NCBI GenBank assembly: GCA_002269645.1
Contig: NIVC01000386.1
Span: forward strand, 248,001-312,000
Direction of reading: 5' to 3'
From: Macrostomum lignano
Lineage: Eukaryota
DNA: 64,000 bases
Part shown: positions 17,180 through 36,813 of the stretch, piece after piece
Layout of the letters: every line of letters begins with the position of its first letter
Numbering within the stretch: the stretch's first letter is position 1
Translations under genes and position numbers: made by a program
Notes under the pieces: generated by a model
Seen by the model: only the letters and a program-made list of their open reading frames with translations
The model's database searches: none
What the model was told of the DNA's origin: nothing

Positions 17180-18625
17180 CACCTGATCTCTCATGCAATC
17201 ACACCTGATCTCTCATGCAATCACACCTGATCTCTCACGCAATCACACCTGATCTCTCATGCAATCACACCTGATCTCTCATGCAATCACACCTGATCTC
17301 TCATGCAATCACACCTGATCTCTCATGCAATCACACCTGATCTCTCATGCAATCACACCTGATCTCTCATGCAATCACACCTGATCTCTCATGCAATCAC
17401 ACCTGATCTCTCATGCAATCACACCTGATCTCTCATGCAATCACACCTGATCTCTCATGCAATCACACCTGATCTCTCATGCAATCACACCTGATCTCTC
17501 ACGCAATCACACCTGATCTCTCATGCAATCACACCTGATCTCTCATGCAATCACACCTGATCTCTCATGCAATCACACCTGATCTCTCATGCAATCACAC
17601 CTGATCTCTCATGCAATCATACCTGATCTCTCATACAATCATACCTGATCTCTCACGCAATCACACCTGATCTCTCATGCAATCACACCTGATCTCTCAT
17701 ACAATCACACCTGATCTCTCATGCAATCACACCTGATCTCTCATACAATCATACCTGATCTCTCACGCAATCACACCTGATCTCTCATGCAATCACACCT
17801 GATCTCTCATGCAATCACACCTGATCTCTCATACAATCAAGCATGATCTCTCATACAATCACACCTGATCTCTCATACAATCAAGCATGATCTCTCATGC
17901 AATCACACCTGATCTCTCATGCAATCACACCTGATCTCTCATGCAATCACACCTGATCTCTCATACAATCAAGCATGATCTCTCATACAATCACACCTGA
18001 TCTCTCATGCAATCACACCTGATCTCTCATGCAATCACACCTGATCTCTCATGCAATCACACCTGATCTCTCATGCAATCACACCTGATCTCTCACGCAA
18101 TCACACCTGATCTCTCACGCAATCACACCTGATCTCTCATGCAATCACACCTGATCTCTCATACAATCACACCTGATCTCTCACGCAATCACACCTGATC
18201 TCTCATGCAATCACACCTGATCTCTCATACAATCACACCTGATCTCTCATGCAATCACACCTGATCTCTCATGCAATCACACCTGATCTCTCATGCAATC
18301 AAGCATGATCTCTCATACAATCACACCTGATCTCTCACGCAATCACACCTGATCTCTCATGCAATCACACCTGATCTCTCATACAATCACACCTGATCTC
18401 TCATGCAATCATACCTGATCTCTCATGCAATCACACCTGATCTCTCATGCAATCACACCTGATCTCTCATACAATCAAGCATGATCTCTCATGCAATCAC
18501 ACCTGATCTCTCATGCAATCACACCTGATCTCTCATACAATCAAGCATGATCTCTCATGCAATCACACCTGATCTCTCATGCAATCACACCTGATCTCTC
18601 TCATACAATCAAGCATGATCTCTAC
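17180..18625. repeat. 22-bp minisatellite (ACACCTGATCTCTCATGCAATC), ~65 units
   Basis: Visible tandem units downstream of EGFR-A. Confidence 0.95.
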
Positions 18626-19150: not shown

Positions 19151-22100
19151 TCAGGCGTCAGGCTCAAGGTAAGCGCCGTCGTCATGCTCCACCAGTGCGC
19201 GCTGCTGATCCAGGAAGCGGCAATACGCCGCAACATTAGTCGGCCGGCGGACCGAGATCACGAGGTTCGGGTGCACGGGGTTCGCTATGTACGCATTGAC
19301 CCTGCGCCTGGCGTAGTCAACGGGGATGGCAGCACCGAAGGTGGTCATCTCCACTTCTTTGTCACTGAAAATTCCGCGACTGGCGGCTGCGATGTACTTG
19401 GACGGACAGGCGAGGCAGTCATTCATGGTGCCGACCATGTCGCGGAAGCTCGGCCGAGACTCCGGATGCGGCAGCCAGCAGCTCAGCAGGATGTTGTAGA
19501 AGTCGATGCTGCAGATGTCGGGCTGGTTCAGCCGGATGCCCTTCTTCAGCAGGCCGGTGATGTCCTCCACCGAGCGGATCCCGTACGGGTTGTAGGGCGA
19601 CTCGCCGAACGTGCAGATCTCCCACAGCAGCACGCCGTAGCTCCACACATCCGACTTGTGGCTGAACAGTCCGGACTCAAAGCACTCCACGCCGAGCCAT
19701 TTCACCGGCAGCAGGCCGGCCGTCTGGATGAACTCGCCCTCCGACATGTCCAGCAGACGGGCCAGCCCGAAGTCCGTGATCCTCACTTGGTCCGGAGTCT
19801 GCAGCAGCACGTTGCGGGCAGCCAGGTCGCGGTGTACAATGCCCAGAGACTCCAGGTACTCCATGCCCTCCGCCACTTGTAGACCCCAGCGCAGCATTCG
19901 CTCCGCACCGATCTGGTTGCGGTGCGCTCGCAGGAACTCCAGCAGACAGCCCCGAGGCATCAGCGCCGTGATCAGCTGCGGCTCCTGGGTCAGGCACAAA
20001 GCCACCAGTCGGATGCAGCATGGATGCTGCACTCTGGCCAGCATGCTCGCTTCGTTCAGCAGCTCTTGGCCCAGCTTCGGACTGTGGCCGCGCAGCACCT
20101 TGATCGCGACGGGCAGCTCGCGAACTCCCTTGTTCGTGCTCGACCGCAGGATGCCCTTGTACACCGTGCCGAACGCGCCACTGCCAATCTCCTTCTGCTT
20201 CATCACATCGTCGTCATTCACAATCAGCAGCTTCGCCATGGCGTTCGGGTTGCTCGGGTCCGTCAGGTACTCGTCCAAGTCGACGATTTCGTACTTTCGC
20301 ATCCGCCTCCGGTAGTGCACGTAGGCCACCGGCAGCAGCACCAGCAGCACCAGAATGAGCAGCCCGACGCCAATGCCAACGGTGAGGAGTCTCGCAGACG
20401 CCACCGAGTAGCAGCGGCCCTTCGAGTCGGCGCGCATCTCTCGGCTGCTGCAGGCGGCCACGCACTTGCCGTCCTCCTCCAGGTTGCTGCAGCGCTCGCA
20501 CTCGGAGGCGCTCGGACTGCTGCAGCCGCCCTCGCACTCGCTGTGGCACTCCTGACATTCTCCGCTCAGATTGTACCGACCGGCCTCCTGGCACGTGGCG
20601 TAGCAGCGGCCGTCCACCTCGAAGTTCCGGCAGGCTACGCACATGTCGGGTCCGGGTCCCCAGCACTCGTCGCGGCACTGGGGGTCGCAGACGGCGTTTC
20701 TGCACACCTCGCTCGTGTTGTCGAAGCTGCGCTCCTTATCTGTTTCGCTTGGCCAGTGCTCCTTCAAGTCTTGCAGCTTCGCCGCGAAGTTGAACGGAAA
20801 CCAGCGAGCGCAGAGACCTCTGACATTTCTCAGGCCGAAACAGGACACGTATTTCAGAGAGGCGAAGCCAAAATGAGTAATTCTGCAGTCATCAACAAAT
20901 AGGTGCCCTGAAACTTGCACGAGATTTTTAAGAAAGCTAAGGCTTCCTATGTGCTCTGGAATATTTTTTATTACAAATTTTTCGACCAAAATAGCTCGAA
21001 CGGATTTCAGATTCCAAATTCCAGAATCTGCATCCAGCGGTCCCAATCGCAGTTGATTTCCATCGATGCTTAAAACTTTTTTAAACTTCAACTCTGTCGG
21101 TGCCAGTGTCGAACAGTTGCTATACTTTCCTAGAAATTCCTCAGTAAGGGTTCTCTGAAAGCCGTCTTTGCACACGTAGCAGCCCTGTCGCACTCCGGCC
21201 ACTGAGCAGGGAGTGCAGATTCCGCTGATGGGCATTTGACCATCAGGACATTCGACAATGCAGTACTTGTGATTGGAATCAATCACGAAGTCTCTCGGGC
21301 ACTGGTCAACGCAAACGTTTCCTGCCTGCATCAGAGAATCCTGCGCCGTGTTGATTCGGCTGTATGCCGCATCATACGAATTATTGCGGCAGCTATGGGC
21401 GCACCTGCCGGCCAGAAGCACACTGCGGCACGCGCGACACTCGCTTGGTTGAAATGACCGGCACCCTCCGAGACAGCTGTTGTCGCAGCATTCTTCCTCG
21501 CCGGTGGGCCGAGTATAGCAGGAGTGGCAGCTTCGCTTCCTGCACTTGGACACCATCTGGCACTCCGTGCTTGACCAGCACAATCGGTGGCCTTCCTTGC
21601 TCATGGGACAGTCGTCAGGGCACTCGGGGAGATGAGAACAGATGTTAGCCTGATCAGCCGGTTTGAGCGAACTGTTGGTCATGTTATTCAAGTGAGTCAC
21701 TGCATCGAGCAGATGCTGTTCTTTGTGCTCGAATACTTCACTCCAGCTAATTTTTCGGGTTAGCTGGCAATAGAGGTGGATGTCCATGCTGGTGGAGAAC
21801 ATTACACCGGGTCCTTGGATCGAGACGAGCTTTGGCATGAGTATCTGAGTCGGCGTGTTGCAGTATCCGATCTCCAAGGCGTATAAAGGGTGAGAGGGGC
21901 TTTGCGAGTAGATGAAGCCTCTGATGGCTCTGAGGTTCCGCAGCTCGAGTCGCTTGATGCCGAGGCCCGTGATAACAACTCTACCGGATACCTCTCTAAT
22001 GGAATCAAGAAAGCTAGTATTCATTTCATAGATGTTGCGGTCGATTGTGACTCCGGTGAAGTGCGACCCCAGAAAATGGACGTGCAAATCTCCGTTTACG

Positions 22101-22291
22101 AATTGACAGCCGTCCACCTTGCGGGAGAGAATTTCATGCAGATAGCTCACATTCTTTAGCTGTTTGTAGTCGCTGTTCGTGATGCGGAGGCTCCGGCAGA
22201 TTTTGGGCTCCGGAACTTTGGCCGAGTGGCCGGGCTTCGGCACCCGGAACGCCATCAGCCACAGTAGGACAAGGACCGCGTCGCTTCGCAT
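19151..22291 (-). CDS. EGFR: EGFR/ErbB-family receptor tyrosine kinase, copy A (intronless, ~1046 aa from the ATG of MRSDAVLVLL)
   Basis: Signal peptide, L1 (CQFVNGDLHV, LRNLRAIRG), furin-like Cys-rich region, L2, short CR2, TM (LLTVGIGVGLLILVLLVLLPVAYVHY), kinase motifs IGSGAFGTVYKG, VAIK, HRDLAARN, DFG, SDVWSYG. The ORF track starts 45 nt earlier at a less likely start. Confidence 0.92.
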   Translation of the reverse strand: MRSDAVLVLLWLMAFRVPKPGHSAKVPEPKICRSLRITNSDYKQLKNVSYLHEILSRKVDGCQFVNGDLHVHFLGSHFTGVTIDRNIYEMNTSFLDSIREVSGRVVITGLGIKRLELRNLRAIRGFIYSQSPSHPLYALEIGYCNTPTQILMPKLVSIQGPGVMFSTSMDIHLYCQLTRKISWSEVFEHKEQHLLDAVTHLNNMTNSSLKPADQANICSHLPECPDDCPMSKEGHRLCWSSTECQMVSKCRKRSCHSCYTRPTGEEECCDNSCLGGCRSFQPSECRACRSVLLAGRCAHSCRNNSYDAAYSRINTAQDSLMQAGNVCVDQCPRDFVIDSNHKYCIVECPDGQMPISGICTPCSVAGVRQGCYVCKDGFQRTLTEEFLGKYSNCSTLAPTELKFKKVLSIDGNQLRLGPLDADSGIWNLKSVRAILVEKFVIKNIPEHIGSLSFLKNLVQVSGHLFVDDCRITHFGFASLKYVSCFGLRNVRGLCARWFPFNFAAKLQDLKEHWPSETDKERSFDNTSEVCRNAVCDPQCRDECWGPGPDMCVACRNFEVDGRCYATCQEAGRYNLSGECQECHSECEGGCSSPSASECERCSNLEEDGKCVAACSSREMRADSKGRCYSVASARLLTVGIGVGLLILVLLVLLPVAYVHYRRRMRKYEIVDLDEYLTDPSNPNAMAKLLIVNDDDVMKQKEIGSGAFGTVYKGILRSSTNKGVRELPVAIKVLRGHSPKLGQELLNEASMLARVQHPCCIRLVALCLTQEPQLITALMPRGCLLEFLRAHRNQIGAERMLRWGLQVAEGMEYLESLGIVHRDLAARNVLLQTPDQVRITDFGLARLLDMSEGEFIQTAGLLPVKWLGVECFESGLFSHKSDVWSYGVLLWEICTFGESPYNPYGIRSVEDITGLLKKGIRLNQPDICSIDFYNILLSCWLPHPESRPSFRDMVGTMNDCLACPSKYIAAASRGIFSDKEVEMTTFGAAIPVDYARRRVNAYIANPVHPNLVISVRRPTNVAAYCRFLDQQRALVEHDDGAYLEPDA

Positions 22292-23559
22292 CTCTTGCGA
22301 GTGGTGCTTAGGGTCTTTTATCTGAAATTGAAGCAATTTTTAGGGCTTCAAAATCTAAATCTCATGTTAAAAACTGGCCAATGCAAATTGCGCATACCCT
22401 CTTGCTACACAAGACGTGAAGTTCCCCCTTTTTAATTTGCTTTGAGGGGCGAACCGTTTGAGTTTGGCTAGCAGCTACTTATTAACTAGCCACGAAGACT
22501 TGTCAGCTTACCGCAAATTGCTCTGAGGCGCAGCATGAGAAGCGAAATTTCGTGCAACCTGTGCAGCGGGGGCAGCAGCAGCCAAGAGATGCAATCCAGC
22601 TTTTATGCCCTGAGTCCATTAAGCTCACCCACTCCCCGGCCTCTCCAACCGAGGCGCAAGTGCAAGAGAAGCAGCCAATCTGACGGTAGTTGCCAGCTGT
22701 CTACACGGTTGCACCCGCGAATTTTCCAAAAGAAAGGCACAGTTGGGTGTCCGTCCGTATTGTCAGGAAACAAGTGACCATGATTTACAAGCCGCCATGC
22801 TGAATAGAATCCGTTGTTTACCGCTCTTTGTGTCTGTCGAATCCGCCTGATTCAGTGTGCATTGTCTATTGGCAATTAATTTTCGCGGAAAAAAGTCTTT
22901 GATCTCGCTGAAGTGGGAGCGGCGATCCGAATGAGGATCTGAGGAGAATTCAAGAGTCACGTGAAACCCAATAATTGCTTGAAAGAACAGCTACTGAGTG
23001 CCTTCTAGAACAAGTGATTTGAGCAGCTCTGAGCAGCCCAAATCAGGCTTTATCGCCGATTCAGCAGAGAACGTTTTGAGCCGATAAAGAAGAGACAAAA
23101 GGGTATAACTAAGTGGCCGTTTAGCAGACTATTCAGCGCATTTATTTGATGCATCGCACTCGGCATTCCGTGCATTATCTGACTACTTCGATTAGTTGCG
23201 AAGTGGCACTTTTGATGGCTCAATGAACGTTCGAAGAGAAGATTTTAGCGGGAGCAGGTCAACGCCCCCTCACAGCATGCAGCACCAGGACGGTGCAGCC
23301 CACGTTTTAAAGGTCTGTAGAGAGATCCAAACCAAGAGAACTGAACTCACCTGCAAGACTTGTGATTAACGATATGCCTTTTCAATTTTTGCAGTAGAAA
23401 TTTAGAAGCGGCCCACGCTACCGCGGATAAAAACAAAGAGTAACTCATGAGTGAAGGACGTCCGGGAAGAATGAAAATGTACGAAACAAATGCTCGAATT
23501 CTATCCCTGCTTGTTGAGCGCCATTGTTAACTGCTTGAAAAGGCCCAGTTTAATACGCA

Positions 23560-24400
23560 GTGGTGGGAACAATATCTTTTTGCGATCGATCAACGGCTCG
23601 TGGATGACATCTTTTGCTCTGCAAGGCTCCAGACACTCCGTCACTGGCCACTAATTTTGAAAAATATTGTCTTTTGCGTGACTGCACAAAAACAGGGATT
23701 ACTTGATATAGCCCGACTGTAAGCCCAGTAGGAAATGAACTATCTGCAAATCTACGCAGACAACCCATTCATGATCATGGTAGGCTATTTTCAGCAGAAC
23801 ATACTTGCGTACTTGAACGCATCATATTGTTCCTTTAGTGTTGTCGATTGGGCTAGAGGTATTGATGGTATTGATGGCCTTTGTGTAGCAGTACACATTT
23901 CAAAGAGCGCTTGCTGGGGTCAATACGTCCACCCAAAGTAGCCTAGGGGACAGGGAGACGCAGGTACAGCTCTGCTGCAGCATCGGTCCTATCAGCGCTC
24001 CAAAACTTCCACAGCCTTGTTGGTACGCCGATGTGTAGTAGAGGGTCCTTCCTCACAGCGAAGTCCCGCGGATCCGCCTTAATAGACACCCCCTGCAGCG
24101 CGATGACATCACAGCTTAGGTTGAGAGCTAGCTTTGCCAGAGCCCCTCTCCGCCCTGGCGGCCCCGAGAGTGCGGCAGTTCAGCGTCCCGACCCGAAGTA
24201 TGAGCAGTTGAGCCTCACGGAAGATCCGCATGGGCCAGCGCAGCCGCAGTTCGGGGGACAGCACCACGTCGCCGACCGCGCCAATTTCACTTCACGTCGG
24301 AGCTCAACACGCCGACGTTCGCTCCGCTGCTCTCGCTTAGTCCTGCCGCTGTTGGCCGCCGCAGCAATGAAGCGCGGTCGACCGTCTTGACGACTTGGAG
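23560..24400 (-). mobile_element. Degenerate, internally deleted RTE-like LINE
   Basis: Frameshifted endonuclease remnants LRVGTLNCRTL / DVIALQ / LYYTSAYQQGCGSFGALIGP at ~23850-24215, joined to a C-terminal-like RRFADSSFPT segment at ~23560-23770. Confidence 0.65.
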
Positions 24401-25091
24401 GTCGCAAAATTTACTTTATCCACGTGCAAACAATACAGGACTCCCCTCTCCATAAGTTTGGCTCAAGCCCCGATGCCTGGCATCATTTGTCACTTAGTGA
24501 GCCATTTTGCACTGCATCTGCAGATGCTCAGTGTAAGCTAAAAAACCTTCCTTTGCTTGACTCAACTGGCCAAAACGAGTCCAACACCACTAGCAATGCA
24601 AAGTGCACTGAAGGCCAAGATTTTGTTAGAGAGGAAGAAACAAACAATATCGCGTTACACTGACGCAGCTTTCCCAACTTTGCTGTAATTTTAGCTCGCT
24701 AATGATTTAAGATGCACAAGAAACATCAGCAAACTTCATGGTTGCAGCTTGAATATTAGGCTCGCTACTTACAACAGTATATGCGGGTCTGTGTGCTAGA
24801 TAATTATCACGCCTATGCCAATGTGTTAGTCGATAAGTCAAATATGGATAAACAAAAATTTAGATAGATTTCGATCTGTTTGTGAAGCTGCTGATGATGA
24901 CATTTAGACACAAAAAATGCAAAACCCATTCGACTGAGAGATGCATGCTGCAGTTCGAGATATCTGGGCTTTTAGCCCGGCTGCTTTTCACACCGCAACA
25001 ACCACTCCAGTGGACTACTGGGAGTAATGGGGTTACAACGGTAACCACCAACTATCTGTTGCCTATTCGTCTTTCAAGTCACTGATTAAAC

Positions 25092-25870
25092 CACCAACCA
25101 CCAACCAGTCCCGGGATCCCACACCAACCAGTCCTGGGATTCCCCACCAACCAGTCCCAAGATCCTGAACCAACCAGTCCCGAGATCCTGCACCAACCAG
25201 TCCCGAGAGCCGAGATCCCGCACCAACCAGTCCCGAGATCCCGCACCAACCAGTCCCGAGATCCCGCACCAACCAGTCCCGAGATCCCGCACCAACCAGT
25301 CCCGAGATCCTGCATCAACCAGTCCCGAGATCCTGCACCAATCAGTCCCGAGATCCTGCACCAACCAGTCCCGAGATCCTGCACCAACCAGTCCCGAGAT
25401 CCCGCACCAACCAGTCCCGAGATCCTGCACCAACCAGTCCCGAGATCCTGCACCAACCAGTCCCGAGATCCTGCACCAACCAGTCCCGAGATCCTGCACC
25501 AACCAGTCCCGAGATCCTGCACCAACCAGTCCCGAGATCCTGCACCAACCAGTCCCGAGATCCTGCACCAACCAGTCCCGAGATCCCGCACCAACCAGTC
25601 CCGAGAGCCGAGATCCTGCACCAACCAGTCCCGAGAGCCGAGATCCCGCACCCACCAGGTCCCGAGATCCCGCACCAACCAGTCCCAAGATCCTGCACCA
25701 ACCAGTCCCGAGATCCCCCACCCACCAGGTCCCGGGATCCCACAACAACCAGTCTCGAGATCCTGCACCAACCAGTCTCGAGATCCTGCACCAACCAGTC
25801 CCGGGATCCTGCACCAACCAGTCCCGGGATCCCCCACCCACCAGTCCCGAGATCTCGCACCAACCAGTCA
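25092..25870. repeat. 23-bp minisatellite (CACCAACCAGTCCCGAGATCCTG)
   Basis: 23-aa (3 x 23 nt) periodic ORFs in all minus frames. Confidence 0.95.
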
Positions 25871-26244
25871 GGGGACACTATGCATCCAACGCCGCAACAG
25901 TTGCAGCACATCGTGTGGCAAGTCAGCGTTAGAGTTTCAAGTGAAAACTCGTATTTCAATCCAATGCAGTCCGGAGGGCAGAGTTAATGAATTCACGGGC
26001 ATGAGCCGGCGCAAAACATAATGCAGGATCATTTCGTTCTTCACGATAAATTTAACCAAGCCTAACAGCTGCGCAAATTGTGACTGACATTTGCAATATC
26101 TGAGGCCATGTGGATGAGCACTGGACACTCAAACAGAAATGAAATTGCAATAAACCGGCGAGCAGTCAGGCTGCAAGCTTGAGTTCGAAACATGCATAAT
26201 ACGGTTGGGTTTTAAAATGTTTAAAACTGTTTTTACGGTTAGGC

Positions 26245-26565
26245 CATCGGGGTCACGGAAGGCCATGGGGTCATGGGGGTCAGGGGAGTCATGAAGGTCA
26301 GTGGGGTCATGGGGGTCATAGGGGTCATGGAGGTCAGGGGGATTAGGGGGTCAGTGCGTTAGGGGGTCAGGGCGTTAGGGGGTCAGGGGTCATGGGGGTC
26401 ATGGAGGTCAGGGGGGGGTCAGGGGGTCAGGATTTCAGGGTGTCAGGGTGCCAGGGTCAGGGGTCATGGGGGTCATGGGCGTCATAGGGGTCATGGAGGT
26501 CACGCGTCAGGGTGTCAGGGGTTAGGGGGTCATGGGTCAGGGTGTTAGGGGGTCAGGGGGTCATG
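26245..26565. repeat. Degenerate G-rich GGGGTCA(T) repeat
   Basis: Dense G4-G5 runs; G-quadruplex-prone. Confidence 0.8.
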
Positions 26566-27099
26566 ACACCTAAAATTTGTCTACTGCACCTGATTGGCGG
26601 CTCGGACACGCTAAGCGGTTGAGCCGTTTTTTTCTAAAATTAAAAAAATAGCTCTGGGGCTATTAAATTTTGCAGAATTCCTCCTGCGAAATGTCATAAT
26701 TAGGCCGTGTTTGCTTTCGAAGTTGCCGCGCGCTTCCCTCTTGGCCCCAGATTTCCGCGCAAATATTTTCCCCATCTTTAATTTGCTCACTCTGCTGAGC
26801 TCCCTTAACAAAAAGTTTGCAGAAATCCAAGCCAGCTCTGTGCAGTTTGAGTTGCCGCACTCAATCTGGCACTTTTATTGCTGCGGCACGAGAGGCAATA
26901 AAAGCCAGTGAAAAACGCTGGGCTGCGCAAGCAGGCAGCGGCTGCACTAATCGCGTCCTGCACTCAGCGAGTTCGTCTGTTCGTCTGGATGAAATAACAG
27001 ATTTTGCCGTGAAGCCGCTGATAAATGCAGGCTGCGAAATCCGACTGCGCTGCTGGCTGAACTGCCTCTTCCAATCCTCTGCGCTTCGTGTCCGCCCTC

Positions 27100-27545
27100 T
27101 GCCGCTTCTTAGCGGACTCTACTTTTCCCTCTAGCGCTCTACGCTTTTCTCCACCCGCTCTACTTTTCCCTCTAGCGCTCTACGCTTTTCTCTACCCGCT
27201 CTACTTGTCTCTCTACCGCTCTACTTTTCTCTCTACCGCTCTACTCTTCCCTCAACCGCTCTACTTGTCTCTCTACCGCTCTACTTTTCTCTCTACCGCT
27301 CTACTCTTCCCTCTACCGTTCTACTCTTCTGTCTACCGCTCTACTTTTCTCTCTACCGCTCTACTCTTCCCTCTACCGTTCTAATCTTCTGAATATCGCT
27401 CTACTTTTCTCTCTACCGCTCTACTCTTCCCTCTACCGTTCTACTCTTCTGACTATCGCTCTACTTTTCTCTCTACCGCTCTACTCTTCTCTCTACCACT
27501 CTACTCTTCTCTCAAAAGCGCTACTCTTCCCTCTACCGCTGGACT
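27100..27545. repeat. 20-bp pyrimidine-rich minisatellite (CCGCTCTACTTTTCTCTCTA)
   Basis: Visible tandem units. Confidence 0.9.
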
Positions 27546-28120
27546 TTCCTATCAACCAAATGATTATTTGATCCAACGATTCGCCTGATATCACATCACT
27601 ATAGGTAAATTTCAATACAGGAGTTCTGCGAAAGCGCTAATCTGGGCCTTTGCCATATCAAGGACTTCATATTTAATAAATGATTTGTCCGCCCACTCAC
27701 CAAACTCTAAATTGACAAGATTGGCGATTGATATTCATCATCTGGAATTTTCTAATGCTTTAAAGTTTTTTTTTCTGACCGCATGGACACAATTCTTCAC
27801 TATCTGTTGCCTATTAGTCCTTCAAGTCACTGATTAAACTTCAAAGCTTAAAAAGTTTCTGGCCATTTCTGTGTCTACCACCGCCTGTCCTCTGAAGTCC
27901 GGGCCGCTCTGAATGATAAACAACACCCACAGAAGCGAAATAGCTGCTGCTACTGTTGCTACTAGGGGCAGAAAATATCTGTGCCGCTGAAAGAGCGAGT
28001 TGGCTCATCTGCTGCTGAGATGCAAAGCAGAGGCTGGCATCGAACTGCAACTGCGTAATTCACAACAGCACATTGCTGCATAGCGCTTGCCGAACTCTCT
28101 TAGTAACTGAATATGACTGC

Positions 28121-28810
<690 letters not shown>

Positions 28811-29459
28811 CAGATGATACAAGGACACACAGACAGGCATAATGAGATGCAGACAGGCAGGAATTAAAAGCTACAGAGCCCATCAAGCTAATCAGATTTG
28901 TCTTTTCACTCAGCGCCACTTCCTGATGCTAATGAGAGCAGAAGGCTCTGGCACTCTGATGCCGCTGTCATTAGAAATGCATCATCCAAGCAATCCGGTC
29001 ATGCTTGGACATCAATGATTCCGCATGACTGCGATGACGCAACTGGCCAATTGGCTCAAAGCAGTTTGTAGAAAGCTGAAAGTCAGCGGCTGAAAGCGGC
29101 ATTCCGCAATGCAGCCACAGCAGTGCGACGATAATCCGCTAGTTGTAATAAACCAAATTCGGTAACTTGGTGAGCCAAAATCAGCTGACAGGAGTGATGG
29201 ATGGGGGGGGGCATTCGAGAAGGGAGAAAGTGTCGCTACAAACGCACTGCGCATGCAGACAGACGGACCGGAACTTCACTGAAATGAGATTTCCCATGAA
29301 TCCGAGCTTCAGGGATGCGAGAAGGAAATTTTTTGCAGTGGAAATTTATTGGATGCGAGGGGTGAGGGGAAATGCGAGTGAATGGAAAAGGAAGAGTAGG
29401 TGATGAGTGCGGTAAGGTTGGATAGCTAGTGGATTGAGGGGCAATAGAGGGTCAAAGTA

Positions 29460-29990
29460 GGGAAGTGGAGTAGAGAGGGGTAGACTGGTGTAGAGAGGGG
29501 TAGACAGGTGTAGAGAGGGGTAGACTGGTGTAAAGAGGGGTAGACAGGTGTAGAGAGGGGTAGACTGGTGTAAAGAGGGGTAGACAGGTGTAGAGAGGGG
29601 TAGACTGGTGTAAAGAGGGGTAGACAGGTGTAGAGAGGGGTAGACAGGTGTAAAGAGGGGTAGAGAGGGGTAGAGAGGGGTAGAGAGGGGTAGAGAGGGG
29701 CAGAGAGGGGTAGAGAGGGGTAGAGAGGGGCAGAGAGGGGTAGACAGGTGTAAAGAGGGGTAGAGAGGGGTAGACAGGTGTAAAGAGGGGTAGAGAGGGG
29801 CAGAGGGGGGTAGACAGGTGTAAAGATGGGTAGAGAGGGGTAGACAGGTGTAAAGAGGGGTAGAGAGGGGTAGAGAGGCGTAGAGAGGCGTAGAGAGGGC
29901 TAGAGAGGGGTAGAAATATGTAGAGAGATGTAGAGAGGGTAGAGAGCAGTAGAGAAGGGTAGAAAGGGGTAGAGAGGGGTAGAGAGAGTA
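29460..29990. repeat. Purine-rich 10/20-bp minisatellite (GGGGTAGAGA / GTAGACAGGTGTAAAGAGGG)
   Basis: Visible tandem units. Confidence 0.9.
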
Positions 29991-30507
29991 GATCGGCGAC
30001 ACCGCCTTAACTTGACATCTGGACTGCCACAGAGCTCTGCCGTTCTGTCCCAACGTTTAACAGAACACAAGCGTAAAATGAACTTGCAATCTTGCGCCAC
30101 TAAAATCTGCACCTCTGTACACCAAGAGCTGAAGCGCCAAACGCCCGCGCAGACATGGATGGCCAAACTGCAGGTGAAAGTCCGATAGCAAAAACTCGAG
30201 CCATTTGATTTTGCATTTTGTGATCTCGGCAGTTCAACTTAACGCACTTGCTGTTAATTTTCTGTGTTTATCAAAATTGTAAATTAAATTTTATCATTTT
30301 CTGCGAAGAAAAACAGCGCGGCATTCGTTGACTACGCGAAAAATTTTAATAAACTGCTAATTGTTGTGACGCAGGACAACTGATGCGTTGCCTGTTGCAT
30401 TAAGCATACTTAGCTCGGATATGCGATGTTCTTTCTGAGAGGGCGTCGCTTTTACAAACTAGAAATGCCCGTTATTTTCACAAGCTCAAATTTATGAAAG
30501 CCAGTAA

Positions 30508-32150
30508 CGGGTGTCAGACTGTCAGGATCGCTAGAGTGGGTGTCAGACTGTCAGGGGACCAATAGAGTGCGTGTCAGACTGTCAAGGATCGCTAGAGTGG
30601 GTGTCAGACTGTCAGGATCGCTAGAGTGGGTGTCAGACTGTCAGGGGACCAATAGAGTGCGTGTCAGACTGTCAGGATCGCTAGAGTGAGTGTCAGACTG
30701 TCAGGATCGCTAGAGTGGGTGTCAGACTGTCAGGAGACCAATAGAGTGGGTATCAGACTGTCAGGATCGCTAGAGTGGGTGTCAGACTGTCAGGGGACCA
30801 ATAGAGTGGGTGTCAGACTGTCAGGGGACCAATAGAGTGCGTGTCAGACTGTCAAGGATCGCTAGAGTGGGTGTCAGACTGTCAGGATCGCTAGAGTGGG
30901 TGTCAGACTGTCAGGGGACCAATAGAGTGCGTGTCAGACTGTCAGGATCGCTAGAGTGGGTGTCAGACTGTCAGGGGACCAATAGAGTGCGTGTCAGACT
31001 GTCAAGGATCGCTAGAGTGGGTGTCAGACTGTCAGGATCGCTAGAGTGGGTGTCAGACTGTCAGGATCGCTAGAGTGGGTGTCAGACTGCCAGGATCGCT
31101 AGAGTGGGTGTCAGACTGTCAGGATCGCTAGAGTGGGTGTCAGACTGCCAGGATCGCTAGAGTGGGTGTCAGACTGTCAGGGGACCAATAGAGTGGGTGT
31201 CAGACTGTCAGCATCGCTAGAGTGGGTGTCAGACTGTCAGGACCGTTCTTGGTGTAGAAAGCACACGGTATACTTTGCCTGTTTCTGGTCTCCAATAGCA
31301 GATTAATTTCAGTTCGTTTTGAAGCGACACTGGGGATGAATTCCAGCAAATCCCGTATAAAATTTCCGGGATAAAGCAGCACGAAAAAAGTTTAAGTGCA
31401 AGATATTATAGCCATCCTGTTGCTATGGGGTCTACGAGAAGTTCTGAACCCGGACGAACTGCACTTGGGATTTGCCAGCCTGCGCCCCCTCCCCCCAGTT
31501 CAAGAAGACGAGGTCTTTCTGATTGTACAGCTTACCAACAAACCATTCGCTGCTTTATCAAGGATACAGAAAAACTGAAAAATGTCAGCAGTTCGGTACA
31601 TCCTAGCTTGTCTCGTGGAATTAAAGCTTTTAGTTGTAGAGGTCTGTCTAAGTGAGTGACTGCATGTTCTCGATCTTCGCTTGCTACACTGGTTAGCATT
31701 AAAGCTGACGGGTGTCAGACTGTCAGGATCGCTAGAGTGGGTGTCAGACTGTCAGGCTTGCTATATGGGGTGGGTGTCAGACTGTCAGGATCGCTAGAGT
31801 GGGTGTCAGACTGTCAGGATCACTAGAGTGGGTGTCAGACTGTCAGGATCGCTAGAGTGGGTGTCAGACTGTCAGGATCGCTAGAGTGGGTGTCAGACTG
31901 TCAGGATCGCTGGAGTGGGTGTCAGACTGTCAGGATCGCTGGAGTGGGTGTCAGACTGTCAGGATCGCTGGAGTGGGTGTCAGACTGTCAGGATCGCTGG
32001 AGTGTTTGTCAGACTGTCAGGATCGCTGGAGTTGGTGTCAGACTGTCAGGATCGCTGGAGTGGGTGTCAGACTGTCAGGATCGCTAGAGTGGGTGTCAGA
32101 CTGTCAGGATCGCTAGAGTGAGTGTCAGACTGTCAAGGATCGCTAGAGTT
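30508..32150. repeat. 29-bp minisatellite (GTGTCAGACTGTCAGGATCGCTAGAGTGG) in two blocks, 30508-31245 and 31709-32150
   Basis: Same unit in both blocks, separated by ~460 bp of unique sequence. Confidence 0.93.
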
Positions 32151-32261
32151 TCTAAAATTCTAGAGTGACTGTCAGAACAGTGCCATGACAACGCTTTTCC
32201 AGGAAACGCTATGAACACAATTTACCAGCACAAGGAAAGCTCGGAGCGCAGCAACCCTGAA

Positions 32262-32849
32262 TAGGGAGTACAATCCAGGGATTTTGGTTAGGCCTAAATT
32301 CCGGGATCACAATTGTCCGATATTCGAAAATCCCGGGATTGACCATCGGGATCCTGATCCTGCTTTGCAATGATCTCGAGTATCTGCAGCTGAGATACTT
32401 TTCAGGTGAAAATCATAACCCAGTTGTCCTACCTTGATTTCTTAATCGTTTTAAGCATGCAGGCTAGCGAGTAGAAGGCTATAGGGCTGTAGGGACACGA
32501 AACAGAAGCTGTTAGCAGGTCGTAAGGGTATTTAAGGTGTACTAATGTAGAACTACTTTAAGCAGTCCCTACCTTCAAAACTCCTTGGCCGTAGTTGGGA
32601 TTAGAACAGTGGGACATTGCTATCAGACCACAACCCAAGCTACCAGTTCTCCATCTAGGGCGGTGCCCCTTGGAGGGTGAGGTCTGATCCCCTTCTACCC
32701 AGGAATCAGCACCTCGGGCCATAGCTCTGTAAGCTATCATTCCCCAGGTTACATCACAATCAAGTGTGATTTTCCTGAGCTGTTACAGCACCTTTAAAGA
32801 AATCCCGACAATCCCGGGATTGGCAAAACTCGGGATTTTGTATTCCCTA
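32262..32849. mobile_element. hAT-type MITE (588 bp)
   Basis: TIRs TAGGGAGTACAA / TTGTATTCCCTA, subterminal CCCGGGAT repeats, perfect 8-bp TSD ACCCTGAA at 32254-32261 and 32850-32857. Confidence 0.88.
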
Positions 32850-33541
32850 ACCCTGAAAATTTAAGTGGTTTGCCATGATGCCATGCCATTGCCATCGGTT
32901 TGTCACAACCCACCAATATTTTCAGTCAGTTTCATTTTATTAATTGGACCAGTGCCCAATCCGAGTCAAATGTACAGTGCGCACGGAATGCACACTCCTT
33001 GTACACTCAGTCACTCTGTGCGCTTGAGGCCACAGCTGAGGAGTGGGGCTGGGGGGTGCTTGCGATAAGTCAGCTCGCAGTCAATTGGGTGACGGGGCAC
33101 AGCGGGGGGGTCTGCATTTGAAAGGCAGACCGGCCCCATTTTACTGATAAGCGAATGGAGGCCTGATATGGCATAAAGCGTTGTAGCGATCTCGCAGTGC
33201 TTTATATAGCCTGGCTGGCAAACTGCGTGGGCCGCACGAGTAGAGAAAAACGCAACAAACAGGTAAACCGACCAAGCTGCCAAGAGAAGCCTTTGATTTG
33301 GCAGCTCACCTGCAATCAACTACGCTTTAGTATTGTTTGTTTGTTAAAAACCTTCGCAAAAGACTGCCTTATTGGGGCATTTCCCGCAACTGCGCGAGCC
33401 TGATAAGATAAAGGCCGATTCAATTCACTTTCAAAGGACAGGCTCAGCGAGCGGAAAGGCGAGGCAAAACGAGTAATTAACAGCTGAAAAATACTGCAGA
33501 ATTTCCTGGCAGCCTGCGCGAAACAGTTGACGCTGGGAAAC

Positions 33542-36500
33542 ATGACTCTAAGGCTCCGGCTGCTCACTCTGCAGCTGCTGCTGCTGGCCGCATCAGCTTC
33601 AGCCAGCCAGCCGCTGGGCTCCAGCAGCCGCCTGTGCAAGACGGTCTACATCTCAAGTCGCGAGTACCGCACCCACAGGAACATCAGCCGGCTGCATGCT
33701 GAGCTCCAGGCCAGCGTGGACGGCTGCCAGTACGTTCACGGCGACGTAATCATCCAGAACATCGGCGCCGACTCCGTCACTGAGGAGCCGATTGACGAGG
33801 CCATCCGCGGCCTCCAAACCGACTTCCTGGACTCCATCATCGAGATCAGCGGCCGATTGGTGATCAAACGGATTAACCTGGAGCGCATCAGCTTGCGCAA
33901 CTTGCGCGCCATCCGCGGCTACAACCTGGAGAACACCAGCCCCTTCTTCGCAATGGAGGTTTTCCAATCGAAGTACCCGGTCAAGCTAGAGCTGCCGCAG
34001 CTGAGCGCCATCCTGCAAGGCGACGTCCGCATCATCGGCAACCTGCACGCCGACCTTTACTGCTACCTGTCCCGCCGGATTAATTGGCCCAGCCTCTTCC
34101 AGAGCCACTCGAGCCGAACGCCGCAGCAGTTCAACGACAACGTCGAGATCATGACGCTGGGCGACCAGCAGATCAACGTCAGCGACTACGCCGCAACCGA
34201 GAAGGTCTGCACGTCGCTTCCAGCGTGCAACTCCAGCTGCCACACGGAGAAGTCCGGGCGGCAGCTCTGCTGGTCCGACAGTCCCGGGGGCTGCCAGAGC
34301 TTCCACGGGTGTCTCGTGCGCCCATGTCGGAACTGCTTCCGCCATCCGTACACAGGCAACGAGGAGTGCTGCGAAAGCGACTGTCTTGGCGGTTGCTCGA
34401 ACAAATCGGACGGCTGCTTCTCCTGCCGCGATGTCAGCCTGGACGGCGTCTGCAAAGGCAACTGCCCGATGAAGACCGATCTGAACCCCGGCACCAACAA
34501 GATCGAGACGCGGAACTCCAGTACAACTATGAAGCGAGTGGGCAACATCTGCGTGAAACAGTGCGAGATGCCCTTCGTCACCAGCTCCAACGACAAGTAC
34601 TGCGTGAGCGAGTGCCCTCTGACCGAGATTCCCGTCAATGGCATCTGTACGCGCTGCGCGGCCAAGCACCAGTCTGCCTGCGAGACGTGCACCGTCGACA
34701 CGCTAATCATGAGCGACAAAGTGGCGCAGGCTTTGAAGAACGGCAACTGCACGATTTGGCGGACCGACTCGTCGCTGGATATCAACTCGGAGAAGCTCAA
34801 CAGCAGTGCCAGCCTCGAGACGCTGGAGTTTCTGCGAATTTTCTATGGCCGACTGTTCATCAAGCGGACGGATCGGCTGGTGGACAATCTGCGGTTCCTT
34901 CGCAATCTTAAATTTGTTTCGAACAACTTTGGCATCATGATGCTGCACACGCGGTACCTGGGCCTCGCCAGCCTGCGATACGCCAAAGCTCTCTGGCTCA
35001 TCAAGATCAGCGGGCTCTGCGAAGCTTGGTACCCTAGCAGAACAATTCGACAGATTACAGAGGTCACGAAAGAATTTACCATAGGCACCCGTGAAATCAG
35101 CTTCGACAACACGAGCGAGGTGTGCAGGAACGCCGTCTGTGACCCCAGTGCCGCGACGAGTGCTGGGGACCCGGACCCGACATGTGCGTAGCCTGCCGGA
35201 ACTTCGAGGTGGACGGCCGCTGCTACGCCACGTGCCAGGAGGCCGGTCGGTACAATCTGAGCGGAGAATGTCAGGAGTGCCACAGCGAGTGCGAGGGTGG
35301 CTGCAGCGGTCCGAGCGCCTCCGAGTGCGAGCGCTGCAGCAACCTGGAGGAGGACGGCAAGTGCGTGGCCGCCTGCAGCAGCCGAGAGATGCGCGCCGAC
35401 TCGAAGGGCCGCTGCTACTCGGTGGCGTCTGCGAGACTCCTCACCGTCGGCATTGGCGTCGGGCTGCTCATTCTGGTGCTGCTGGTGCTGCTGCCGGTGG
35501 CCTACGTGCACTACCGGAGGCGCATGCGAAAGTACGAAATCGTCGACTTGGACGAGTACCTGACGGACCCGAGCAACCCGAACGCCATGGCGAAGCTGCT
35601 GATTGTGAATGACGACGATGTGATGAAGCAGAAGGAGATTGGCAGTGGCGCGTTCGGCACGGTGTACAAGGGCATCCTGCGGTCGAGCACGAACAAGGGA
35701 GTTCGCGAGCTGCCCGTCGCGATCAAGGTGCTGCGCGGCCACAGTCCGAAGCTGGGCCAAGAGCTGCTGAACGAAGCGAGCATGCTGGCCAGAGTGCAGC
35801 ATCCATGCTGCATCCGACTGGTGGCTTTGTGCCTGACCCAGGAGCCGCAGCTGATCACGGCGCTGATGCCTCGGGGCTGTCTGCTGGAGTTCCTGCGAGC
35901 GCACCGCAACCAGATCGGGGCGGAGCGAATGCTGCGCTGGGGTCTACAAGTGGCAGAGGGCATGGAGTACCTGGAGTCTCTGGGCATTGTACACCGCGAC
36001 CTGGCTGCCCGCAACGTGCTGCTGCAGACTCCGGACCAAGTGAGGATCACGGACTTCGGGCTGGCCCGTCTGCTGGACATGTCGGAGGGCGAGTTCATCC
36101 AGACGGCCGGCCTGCTGCCGGTGAAGTGGCTCGGCGTGGAGTGCTTTGAGTCCGGACTGTTCAGCCACAAGTCGGACGTGTGGAGCTACGGCGTGCTGAT
36201 GTGGGAGATCTGCACGTTCGGCGAGTCGCCCTACAATCCGTACGGGATCCGCTCAGTGGAGGACATCACCGGCCTGCTGAAGAAGGGCATCCGGCTGAAC
36301 CAGCCCGACATCTGCAGCATCGACTTCTACAACATCCTGCTGAGCTGCTGGCTGCCGCATCCGGAGTCTCGGCCGAGCTTCCGCGACATGGTCGGCACCA
36401 TGAATGACTGCCTCGCCTGCCCGTCCAAGTACATCGCACAGCGGTACAGCACCATGGACCCGAACCTGTTCGACACCGATGATGCTGTCGGGTTTGTGAC

Positions 36501-36813
36501 CGAAGTGTCAAAGCCGGCCGCACCGCAGCCGTTGCAGAAAAGCCCGGACAAGCACGGCGTGGAGCTGAACTCGTACATCTCTGACCCGACCTACCGCTCG
36601 GCATCGAAACTGCGTAACTCGCCGGCACGGGCGCTGCAAGCTCAGGCCAGCAACACCAGCGAGAGCGCCGGCCTGCTGAGCGGCCAGATGAGCGTGCCCG
36701 ACGCAAACGACGACTACCTGACGCCGACGTCGCCGGGAGATAACAACGGAGACGTGCACGACGGTGGCGGAGCAGGCGGCCTGGACGACTACCTGACGCC
36801 GAGGAAGGCGTGA
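33542..36813 (+). CDS. EGFR: EGFR/ErbB-family receptor tyrosine kinase, copy B (intronless, ~1090 aa after repairing one frameshift)
   Basis: Signal peptide MTLRLRLLTLQLLLLAASASA and the same domain order as copy A. A -1 C at 35143-35146 (GACCCCAG vs GACCCCCAG in copy A) splits it into ORFs 33527-35191 and 35182-36813. The tail carries DDYLTP x2. Confidence 0.88.

What the first reader, a model, noticed from the sequence alone, without database searches (positions are those of the whole stretch)
19388..36438. Head-to-head EGFR pair sharing a ~99% identical inverted CR2-TM-kinase block: candidate invertible ectodomain/tail switch
Seen: 19388-20729 (minus) and 35098-36438 (plus) are near-identical, with about 14 substitutions counted by eye (2 non-synonymous) plus one homopolymer indel. 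The block starts at SFDNTSEVC and ends exactly at CPSKYIA. Outside it, the L1-CR1-L2 ectodomains are strongly diverged (only motif-level similarity) and the C-tails are unrelated (A ends DDGAYLEPDA; B has two DDYLTP). Inference: the sharp two-sided boundary points to recent gene conversion or exon-free shuffling. Because the copies are inverted, one crossover would flip the 14.4-kb spacer holding both promoters and both ectodomains. That would pair ectodomain A with tail B and vice versa, a shufflon-like way to recombine ligand input with docking output on a shared kinase.
Basis: partly seen in the sequence, partly recalled or inferred. Interest (0 to 1): 0.88.

Follow-up and report, generated by a model that had tools for sequence, protein, structure and literature searches.

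The report
Gene-converted EGFR pair in a flatworm
Two neighbouring, oppositely oriented EGF-receptor genes of the flatworm Macrostomum lignano share a 1.34-kb stretch that was copied from one gene into the other in an old gene-conversion-type event. It is a clean but ordinary mosaic, and nothing suggests it works as a DNA switch.

Summary
Window 19388-20729(-) and 35098-36438(+) are inverted copies that differ by 14 substitutions (12 synonymous) and one C5/C4 indel. Each lies in frame inside one of two intronless, head-to-head EGFR genes. The window is Macrostomum lignano contig NIVC01000386.1 (assembly Mlig_3_7).

The block is a real mosaic. Ectodomain trees group gene B with paralog C (99% bootstrap) and leave gene A outside. 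The block groups A with B (100%). GC3 is 0.87 in the block, 0.82 in B's own flanks and 0.61 in A's ectodomain (0.40 next to the junction). That points to B as donor and A as recipient.

The transfer is old. A-B dS is about 0.04, equal to or above the dS between the three homeologous copies of the locus (0.008-0.029). A is no closer to the B on its own contig than to the other two B copies. Eight differences are fixed.

All three homeologs and an independent gene model keep the same orientation, and no chimeric protein model exists. No recombinase or recombination site is present. The shufflon-like switch is geometrically possible but unsupported. The tails are not unrelated: both keep NxYIx(N/D)P and YLxP motifs. 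The indel frameshifts gene B in this contig only.

The parts
19151..22291 (-). Gene A: intronless EGFR-family receptor tyrosine kinase, 1046 aa plus stop (Met at 22291).
   Evidence: Continuous ORF. Pfam Recep_L_domain, Furin-like, GF_recep_IV, PK_Tyr_Ser-Thr. 99-100% identical to M. lignano UniRef models P0001/P0013.
20730..22291 (-). Gene A native ectodomain L1-CR1-L2 (521 aa).
   Evidence: 34-36% aa identity to B, C and D. Lies outside the (B,C) clade. GC3 is 0.61, falling to 0.40 in the last 300 nt. No nucleotide-level hit to C or D.
19388..20729 (-). Arm 1 of the inverted repeat: CR2 (domain IV), transmembrane, juxtamembrane and kinase of gene A. Inferred to be the recipient copy.
   Evidence: 98.9% identical to arm 2. 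GC3 0.87 versus 0.61 and 0.73 in A's own flanks. Eight synonymous sites differ from all three B copies, so it is a distinct genomic copy.
19154..19387 (-). Gene A native C-tail (78 aa) with NAYIANP and GAYLEPDA motifs.
   Evidence: The same junction KYIA|AASRG is present in models P0001, P0013, P0014 and P0057.
22292..33541 (.). 11.25-kb divergent intergenic spacer between the two start codons (14.37 kb between the repeat arms). About 35% is minisatellite or (GATA)n.
   Evidence: Tandem repeat. No credible ORF with a Pfam hit. Collinear but with array-length differences in the two other homeologs.
33542..36813 (+). Gene B: intronless EGFR-family receptor. 1090 aa when the 1-nt deletion is repaired; frameshifted in this contig.
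   Evidence: Intact 1090-aa orthologous copies P0015 and P0055 lie on contigs NIVC01000639.1 and NIVC01001626.1. NCBI annotates this copy as the 549-aa protein P0056.
33542..35097 (+). Gene B ectodomain L1-CR1-L2.
   Evidence: Sister to paralog C (45-50% aa, 99% bootstrap; 66-71% nt). GC3 0.82.
35098..36438 (+). Arm 2 of the inverted repeat: CR2-TM-JM-kinase of gene B. Inferred to be the donor copy.
   Evidence: GC3 0.875 matches B's flanks (0.82 and 0.82). The kinase part is 78-81% nt identical to C versus 72-75% to D.
35143..35146 (+). C4 homopolymer (C5 in gene A and in the two other B copies). The 1-nt deletion frameshifts gene B in this contig.
   Evidence: It cannot be decided here whether this is real or a residual PacBio homopolymer error.
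36439..36813 (+). Gene B native C-tail (124 aa plus stop) with NSYISDP and two DDYLTP motifs.

Best explanation
Genes A and B are two old members of the lineage-specific EGFR expansion of Macrostomum lignano. They sit head to head, 11 kb apart.

Inferred event: a single non-reciprocal repair event replaced 1,341 bp of gene A with the corresponding stretch of gene B. This was interlocus gene conversion, or a template-switch repair with the same outcome. The replaced stretch encodes CR2/domain IV, the transmembrane helix, the juxtamembrane region and the whole kinase domain. The event was in frame. It left A's ectodomain and tail untouched and resolved without a crossover, so nothing was inverted.

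Inferred timing: before, or around, the genome duplications that produced the three subgenomes of this species.

Since then both arms have drifted apart at roughly the neutral rate under purifying selection (12 synonymous versus 2 non-synonymous changes).

Consequence: two receptors with very different ligand-binding ectodomains drive an essentially identical, catalytically complete kinase module. Their short tails still carry the same family docking motifs.

The 1.3-kb, 99% identical inverted arms are a passive substrate on which non-allelic homologous recombination could occasionally invert the spacer. That would be an accident, not a mechanism.

What is shown: the mosaic, the tree incongruence, the compositional asymmetry, the age relative to the homeologs, and the conserved orientation. 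What is inferred: the direction B to A, a single event, and the repair mechanism.
For: Mosaic:
- Identity steps from about 50% to 99% and back within a few bases.
- Ectodomain NJ tree has (B,C) at 99% with A outside; block tree has (A,B) at 100%.
- By analogy with paralogs C and D, the unconverted kinase would be about 72-81% nt and 70-79% aa identical.

Direction:
- Block GC3 is 0.87. B ectodomain is 0.82 and B tail 0.82. A ectodomain is 0.61 (0.40 next to the junction) and A tail 0.73.
- The block kinase is closer to C, which is B's sister, than to D at nucleotide level.
- The block begins with SFDNTS, as in C.

Real, not an artefact:
- The A arm differs from every B copy at 8 synonymous sites.
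- Both junctions are in frame with continuous domain architecture.
- The same junctions appear in gene models P0001, P0013, P0014 and P0057, which I take to come from a different assembly.
- All three B homeologs show identical block boundaries against A.

Age, and no ongoing exchange:
- dS(A-B) is 0.039-0.045. dS among the B homeologs is 0.016-0.029 in the block and 0.008-0.014 in the ectodomain.
- A_win differs from B_win, B_L001 and B_L002 at 14, 17 and 14 sites. There is no excess similarity within a contig.
- At least two distinct A copies (Y,Y and H,F ectodomain variants) carry the block with identical junctions.
- Published CDS divergence among the three subgenomes is about 1.1% (PMC10733133), the same as the A-B block divergence of 1.0-1.3%.

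Functional genes:
- 12 synonymous versus 2 non-synonymous changes.
- The G-loop GSGAFG, VAIK, HRDLAARN and DFG motifs are present.
Against: - Before the event the two genes were probably only about 65-80% identical in this region. Classical homologous conversion is inefficient at that level, and no microhomology is evident at either junction. The exact repair pathway is therefore unclear.
- The protein tree of the block does not resolve whether it sits with C or with D (47.5% versus 51.5%). The direction rests mainly on composition.
- High GC3 in the block could in part be a product of GC-biased conversion rather than a marker of origin.
- B homeologs are about twice as divergent in the block as in the ectodomain, and one B copy shares the Ser state with A at codon 71. 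This may indicate some later small exchanges.
- Gene A DNA from the other two homeologous contigs could not be retrieved. The test of 'no ongoing exchange' therefore uses a single A sequence.
- Pilon polishing with multi-mapping short reads (PMC5730564; 93% of read pairs multi-map, PMC10733133) may have altered a few variant sites.
Confidence: 0.75

Rival explanations
1. Long-term concerted evolution. A and B have exchanged sequence repeatedly (many small conversion tracts), perhaps favoured by selection for an identical kinase or dimerisation module. The block is kept similar continuously rather than copied once.
For: - B homeologs show about 2-fold higher synonymous divergence in the block than in the ectodomain. 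That is expected if variants are imported from A copies.
- The Ser/Gly site is polymorphic among B copies, and one B carries the A state.
- Both block ends coincide with transitions from conserved to non-conserved sequence among all paralogs. Homology-limited tracts would end there.
Against: - Eight differences spread evenly over the block are fixed between A and all three B copies.
- A is not closer to the B of its own contig (14 versus 17 and 14).
- dS(A-B) is at least as large as dS between homeologs.
- Repeated tracts of varying length should give a graded boundary, not a step within a few bases.
- A is not B's sister in the ectodomain, so the similarity cannot have been maintained since a duplication of A/B.
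Confidence: 0.13
2. The inverted arms mediate recurrent (germline-polymorphic or somatic) inversion of the 14.4-kb spacer. This would produce A-ectodomain/B-tail and B-ectodomain/A-tail receptors as a regulated or selected source of diversity.
For: - The geometry is correct and both products would stay in frame.
- Arms of 1.34 kb at 99% identity contain perfect stretches of up to about 395 bp.
- Inverted gene/pseudogene repeats close together on one chromosome do cause recurrent inversions in humans. IDS-IDSP1 inversion is the most reported Hunter-syndrome rearrangement, seen in 130 patients among 2798 families (PMC11610362).
Against: - All three homeologous loci, which have diverged about as long as the arms themselves, keep the parental arrangement B-ectodomain/block/B-tail/Abhydrolase_2.
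- Fused model P0057 maps collinearly across A-tail, A-block, spacer and B.
- Seven of seven protein models are parental.
- The arms diverge at the neutral rate. Arms that recombine often are normally homogenised, as in the human Y palindromes (my own knowledge).
- No site-specific recombinase and no short recombination sites are present; the only transposase is a decayed FLYWCH/MULE fragment 6 kb beyond gene A.
- The tails share the same docking motifs, so little 'output' would be swapped.
- No programmed inversion of this kind is known in animals (my own knowledge).
Confidence: 0.05
3. Assembly or polishing artefact. The shared block is a collapse, mis-join or over-polishing in a highly repetitive, triplicated genome.
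For: - The genome is very hard to assemble. It has 180 Mb of duplicated blocks at 95% identity or more and was built by Canu plus Pilon (PMC5730564).
- 93% of read pairs multi-map (PMC10733133).
- The C5/C4 indel has the signature of a PacBio homopolymer error.
Against: - A 1.3-kb repeat is far shorter than PacBio reads and is anchored by unique sequence on both sides.
- Both junctions in A are in frame and join the correct domains.
- The A arm is not identical to any B copy; it has 8 private synonymous sites.
- The same mosaic A occurs in gene models that I take to come from a different assembler.
- A transcriptome-derived partial sequence carries the A-specific junction ETDKER|SFDNTSEVC.
- Polishing cannot turn about 75% identity into 99%.
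Confidence: 0.03

Closest known systems
RHD/RHCE hybrid alleles in humans (segmental gene conversion between oppositely oriented paralogs)
   Same: Two adjacent paralogs in opposite orientation. An internal segment of one replaces that of the other, giving an in-frame mosaic membrane protein with two defined breakpoints (PMC11073622). That the genes lie in opposite orientation is from my own knowledge.
   Different: RH genes are tail to tail, have introns, are about 97% identical throughout and convert repeatedly in present-day populations. Here the flanks are nearly unalignable, the genes are intronless and head to head, and the event looks single and old.
IDS/IDSP1 and similar inverted low-copy repeats that mediate NAHR inversions
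   Same: A gene segment repeated in inverted orientation a few kb away at very high identity. Intrachromosomal recombination between the arms inverts the intervening DNA (PMC11610362).
   Different: In IDS the partner is a pseudogene and the inversion destroys the gene. Here both partners are complete genes and the products would remain in frame. No inversion has been observed here.
Shufflon of plasmid R64 (Rci recombinase, sfx sites) and other bacterial invertible-segment systems
   Same: Only the abstract logic: inversion between inverted repeats inside a coding region would exchange one end of a protein while keeping a constant part.
   Different: Shufflons use a dedicated site-specific recombinase and short specific sites, switch at high frequency, and have one constant N-terminal part with alternative C-terminal cassettes (my own knowledge). 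None of these features is present here.
Lineage-specific EGFR expansions in flatworms (Barberan et al. 2016)
   Same: A and B belong to the independent EGFR expansion reported for M. lignano (8 EGFRs). Their partial 'EGFR-3' is this block (PMC4914847).
   Different: That study did not report the head-to-head pair or the mosaic. It found introns in all six Schmidtea EGFRs, whereas A and B are intronless.

Membership tests
EGFR/ErbB-type receptor tyrosine kinase | Extracellular L domain, furin-like Cys-rich domain, second L domain and domain IV (growth-factor-receptor Cys-rich), followed by a single TM helix. | tested here: met
   Pfam hits Recep_L_domain, Furin-like and GF_recep_IV in A and in the two halves of B. 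The second L domain aligns with paralogs but gave no separate Pfam hit. A hydrophobic TM stretch LLTVGIGVGLLILVLLVLL is present.
EGFR/ErbB-type receptor tyrosine kinase | Cytoplasmic tyrosine-kinase domain with intact catalytic motifs. | tested here: met
   PK_Tyr_Ser-Thr E = 3e-78 and 6e-79. GSGAFG, VAIK, HRDLAARN and DFG are present. Best non-flatworm hits are animal EGFRs.
EGFR/ErbB-type receptor tyrosine kinase | C-terminal tail with tyrosine docking motifs. | tested here: met
   YLEP (A) and 2 x YLTP (B), plus NxYIx(N/D)P in both, conserved in paralogs C and D. The likeness to human EGFR DEYLIP is from memory and is seen in the koala EGFR sequence. Phosphorylation was not tested.
Interlocus (ectopic) gene conversion tract | A segment whose phylogeny conflicts with that of the flanking sequence of the same genes. 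| tested here: met
   Ectodomain tree (B,C) 99% versus block tree (A,B) 100%.
Interlocus (ectopic) gene conversion tract | Near identity at synonymous sites inside the tract and abrupt loss of identity at both ends, with both copies retained. | tested here: met
   dS 0.039-0.045 inside the tract. Identity changes stepwise at 20729/20730 and 19388/19387, and at 35097/35098 and 36438/36439.
Interlocus (ectopic) gene conversion tract | Homology-dependent mechanism (flanking homology sufficient for strand invasion). | tested here: inconclusive
   Pre-event identity is inferred at only about 65-81% from paralogs C and D. No microhomology at the junctions. A template-switch or microhomology repair pathway cannot be separated from classical conversion.
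Programmed DNA inversion system (shufflon / invertase-type switch) | Dedicated site-specific recombinase encoded at or near the locus. | tested here: not met
   Pfam scans of the window's long ORFs found only a FLYWCH domain next to a MULE-like transposase fragment, broken over two frames, at 12084-13404. Spliced genes could be missed by ORF scanning.
Programmed DNA inversion system (shufflon / invertase-type switch) | Both orientations present in a population of molecules. | tested here: not met
   Three homeologous contigs and one independent fused gene model all show the same orientation, and 7 of 7 protein models are parental. Power is low: one inbred line and consensus assemblies.
Programmed DNA inversion system (shufflon / invertase-type switch) | Short, specific recombination sites at the inversion boundaries. 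| not tested
   The repeat is a 1.34-kb coding block, not a short site. No search for sub-motifs was made, because no recombinase candidate exists.
NAHR-competent inverted low-copy repeat | Inverted arms of about 1 kb or more at about 95-99% identity or more on the same chromosome. | tested here: met
   Arms of 1341/1342 bp, 98.9% identical, 14.37 kb apart.
NAHR-competent inverted low-copy repeat | Observed inversion polymorphism or recurrent rearrangement. | not testable with these tools
   This needs raw long reads or population samples. None were accessible.

The most novel reading that the evidence does not exclude
In natural M. lignano populations (or rarely in the soma) the 1.34-kb in-frame inverted arms mediate NAHR inversions of the spacer. 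Both arrangements would then segregate, giving reciprocal A-ectodomain/B-tail and B-ectodomain/A-tail receptors. Because the junction lies inside an identical kinase module, every recombinant would be functional. That would be a natural, non-programmed 'domain-swap by inversion' polymorphism in a signalling receptor.
Probability: 0.06. Interest if true: 0.6.

Novelty: new member of a known kind. Interest (0 to 1): 0.3.

Why it matters
It is a very clean animal example of a domain-precise sequence transfer between receptor paralogs. Two receptors with ectodomains only 34-36% identical now drive the same transmembrane, juxtamembrane and kinase module. This is useful in four practical ways.
1. 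It is a caution for phylogenies and orthology calls of flatworm EGFRs, because kinase-based trees will wrongly pair A and B.
2. It is a caution for RNAi, in situ probes and read mapping in this model organism. Any probe in the 1.3-kb block hits both genes and all six copies.
3. It is a dated marker of ectopic exchange relative to the recent genome duplications of M. lignano.
4. It is a natural experiment for asking what the ectodomain and tail contribute when the kinase is held constant.

It does not reveal a new mechanism.

Tried and rejected
1. Retrieving gene A DNA from the two other homeologous contigs.
   - Exact-product look-ups of the window's A protein and of P0013 found nothing, because A has no NCBI protein in Mlig_3_7.
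   - I then searched for an annotated neighbour on A's far side using the FLYWCH/MULE ORFs. No Mlig_3_7 protein came back.
   - The 10-kb flanks of the B look-ups stop 0.2 kb (L002) and 1.4 kb (L001) short of A's start codon.

2. Exon-boundary explanation for the sharp edges.
   - Paralog C has an intron 8 codons upstream of the block-start equivalent. It has none at the 3' edge, and D has none at either edge.
   - A and B have no GT/AG signals at the junctions. Rejected.

3. Whole-locus palindrome. Apart from the block there is no inverted similarity in 14-42 kb. Two CTCTAC-type minisatellites in opposite orientation flank the (GATA)n array, but they are not centred on the gene pair. Rejected.

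4. Viral or bacterial origin of an 'intronless EGFR'. Rejected once the contig was identified as M. lignano.

5. Donor inference from the protein tree of the block. Unresolved; I relied on GC3 and nucleotide similarity instead.

6. Looking for chimeric proteins in the databases. The two searches returned only clusters whose members are all parental. These are genome-derived models of one line, so the negative result is weak.

Full report
OBSERVATION

- A gapless search gives arms 19388-20683 and 35143-36438 (1296 nt, 99%, 14,459 nt apart).
- Allowing the single indel, the match extends to 19388-20729(-) versus 35098-36438(+), 98.9% over 1342 columns.
- It is the only inverted similarity between 14 and 42 kb.
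- There are exactly 14 substitutions and one 1-nt indel: C5 at 20680-20684 versus C4 at 35143-35146.
- Twelve substitutions are synonymous. Two are not: Ser/Gly at block codon 71 and Leu/Met at codon 368.
- In a 60-column sliding window, identity goes from 22-36/60 to 57-60/60 and back to about 20/60.
- At base level the switch happens within a few nucleotides at both ends.

THE GENES

Gene A (19151-22291, minus strand) is one uninterrupted ORF of 1046 aa. Gene B (33542-36813, plus strand) has the same architecture, but the 1-nt deletion splits it into two ORFs here.

Both genes carry Recep_L_domain, Furin-like, GF_recep_IV and PK_Tyr_Ser-Thr domains. Both have a complete set of catalytic motifs. 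The block covers domain IV (CR2), the TM helix, the juxtamembrane region and the whole kinase, from SFDNTSEVC to CPSKYIA.

ORGANISM AND CONTEXT

- Gene A is 99-100% identical to UniRef models of Macrostomum lignano.
- Repaired gene B is 99% identical to PAA79361.1 / BOX15_Mlig012838g10.
- The window is 100% identical to NIVC01000386.1 of assembly Mlig_3_7, GCA_002269645.1.
- The line sequenced (DV1) carries three homeologous subgenomes. These differ by about 2.2% overall and about 1.1% in coding sequence (PMC10733133).
- The assembly is Canu on PacBio reads, polished with Pilon (PMC5730564).
- As expected, the locus exists three times: contigs 386 (this window), 639 (L001) and 1626 (L002).
- The three copies are collinear. 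They are 97% identical around gene B and 86-95% identical in the repeat-rich spacer.
- Gene B is intact (1090 aa) in the other two copies. The frameshift is therefore private to this contig. It is either a real loss of one of three redundant copies or a residual homopolymer error. I cannot tell which.

IS IT A MOSAIC, AND IN WHICH DIRECTION?

M. lignano has further EGFR paralogs. I used C (P0016) and D (P0017) as comparators.

Identities by segment:
- In the ectodomain, A is 34-37% identical to B, C and D alike, whereas B and C are 45-50% identical.
- A neighbour-joining tree with insect and mammal outgroups gives (B,C) 99% bootstrap with A outside.
- In the block, A and B are 99.5% identical (100% bootstrap), while block-C, block-D and C-D kinases are 70-79% identical.

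That incongruence is the formal signature of a transferred segment.

Composition points to the donor:
- GC3 is 0.87 in the block.
- GC3 is 0.82 in both native flanks of B.
- GC3 is 0.61 in A's ectodomain (0.40 in the 300 nt next to the junction) and 0.73 in A's tail.

Nucleotide similarity points the same way:
- B's ectodomain still matches C (66-71%). A's ectodomain matches nothing.
- The block kinase is nearer to C (78-81%) than to D (72-75%).

I therefore infer B as donor and A as recipient. The protein tree of the block does not resolve this by itself.

NOT AN ARTEFACT

- The A arm differs from all three B copies at eight synonymous sites spread over the block. It is therefore a separate genomic sequence.
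- Both junctions are in frame and join the right domains.
- The junctions DKER|SFDNTS and KYIA|AASRG recur in models P0001, P0013 and P0014 and in the 3053-aa fused model P0057. I take these to come from the other assembly (ML2). That assembly used the same PacBio data with a different assembler; this provenance is my inference.
- A transcriptome-derived partial 'M. lignano EGFR-3' in the supplement of Barberan et al. 2016 carries ...ETDKER|SFDNTSEVC... (PMC4914847). This also suggests that A is transcribed. The text is machine-read and that contig is chimeric further downstream, so this is weak evidence.

AGE, AND WHETHER EXCHANGE CONTINUES

Synonymous divergence:
- dS between the A and B arms is 0.039-0.045.
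- dS among the three B homeologs is 0.016-0.029 in the block and 0.008-0.014 in the ectodomain.

Further points:
- A of this contig differs from the B of the same contig at 14 sites, and from the B copies of the other two contigs at 17 and 14 sites. A is not closer to its own neighbour.
- Eight of the 14 differences are fixed against all B copies. The rest are private variants of single B copies.
- At least two different A copies (ectodomain variants Y,Y and H,F) carry the block with identical junctions.

The simplest reading is one transfer that predates, or is about as old as, the split of the subgenomes. Ordinary divergence under purifying selection followed.

Two small observations leave room for some later patchy exchange. 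The B homeologs differ about twice as much in the block as in the ectodomain. One B copy has the A-type Ser at codon 71. Both could also be noise or polishing effects.

THE SWITCH HYPOTHESIS

The geometry is sound. A crossover between the arms would invert the spacer together with both promoters and ectodomains, and would yield in-frame reciprocal chimeras.

Nothing indicates that this happens:
- All three homeologs have B-ectodomain, block, B-tail and then the same Abhydrolase_2 gene.
- P0057 maps collinearly on the plus strand through A-tail/A-block (19154-20848), the A start region, the spacer and the whole of B.
- All seven protein models in the two clusters are parental.
- Arms that recombine often are normally homogenised. 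These arms have drifted as much as the homeologs have.
- No recombinase gene was found near the pair. The only transposase-like sequence is a FLYWCH plus MULE remnant broken over two frames at 12084-13404.

Both contain NxYIx(N/D)P and an acidic YLxP motif, in the same order as in C and D.

What remains is the generic possibility of NAHR between inverted low-copy repeats. This is well documented for IDS/IDSP1 (PMC11610362). The data here come from one inbred line and from consensus assemblies, so they cannot exclude it at low frequency.

MECHANISM AND OPEN POINTS

The tract length of 1.34 kb is ordinary for conversion. However, the pre-event identity inferred from C and D (about 65% in CR2/TM and 72-81% in the kinase) is low for homologous strand invasion. 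I see no microhomology at the junctions. A template-switching repair event would give the same product.

Both ends coincide with the points where all paralogs change from alignable to unalignable sequence. This fits a homology-limited tract.

Exon boundaries do not explain the edges:
- C has an intron 8 codons upstream of the 5' edge.
- Neither C nor D has one at the 3' edge.
- A and B have no introns at all.

COMPARISON AND VERDICT

This works like the segmental conversions that create RHD-CE-D hybrid alleles (PMC11073622). Structurally it resembles inverted gene/pseudogene repeats such as IDS/IDSP1. It is not a member of any programmed inversion system.

My literature searches found the M. 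lignano EGFR expansion (8 genes, independent of other flatworms; PMC4914847) but no description of this pair or of the mosaic. It is a new, tidy instance of a known process. It has practical consequences for phylogeny, probe design and read mapping in this model, and modest general interest.

Noticed in passing
window 35143-35146: Gene B is frameshifted by a C5-to-C4 deletion in this contig only, and NCBI annotates a truncated 549-aa product (P0056). The two other homeologous copies are intact (1090 aa). It is either a real pseudogenisation of one of three redundant copies or a residual PacBio homopolymer error.
   Followed up: partly
window 12084-13404 (+): FLYWCH zinc-finger ORF with a 48-bp coding repeat, followed in another frame by a MULE-type transposase fragment. 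It is 50% identical to an M. lignano FLYWCH protein and about 40% to MULE/FLYWCH proteins of amphioxus and oysters. It looks like a decayed DNA transposon.
   Followed up: partly
window 1-64000, e.g. 4189-5140, 5674-6597, 7001-7852, 17180-18623, 25099-25869, 28121-28819, 43251-45180: The window is packed with minisatellite arrays of 20-35-bp units and a (GATA)175 array. Nearly all long ORFs outside the two EGFR genes are translations of these arrays and have no credible Pfam hit. Array lengths differ strongly between the three homeologous contigs.
   Followed up: partly
window 27117-27540 and 29470-29986: Two related CTCTAC-type 10/20-bp minisatellites lie in opposite orientation on either side of the (GATA)n array in the middle of the spacer. 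Their centre (about 28505) is 0.6 kb away from the centre of the gene pair (about 27915). blastn finds no significant inverted match between them.
   Followed up: partly
window 42559-43212 (-): Exon of an Abhydrolase_2 (acyl-protein thioesterase / lysophospholipase-like) gene, annotated as 234 aa with introns. It is conserved downstream of gene B in all three homeologous contigs and serves as an orientation anchor.
   Followed up: yes
L004 10001-17121 and L005 10001-18547: Paralogs C (P0016) and D (P0017) have 4 and about 9 introns, whereas A and B have none, although B is C's sister in the ectodomain. C's whole ectodomain is a single exon. This suggests intron loss or retroposition in the history of A and B.
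   Followed up: partly
window 35098-36438 versus L001 and L002 11557-12898: Among the three B homeologs, synonymous divergence is about twice as high inside the block as in the ectodomain. One copy (contig 639) carries the A-type Ser at block codon 71.
   Followed up: partly
gene A, window 19151-22291: Gene A has no protein record in the NCBI annotation of Mlig_3_7, although gene B does. Only UniRef models and a partial transcript in a paper supplement represent it. A further paralog ('EGFR-2' of Barberan et al., ...LCPSKYIAARNAA...) was not returned by my protein searches.
   Followed up: no
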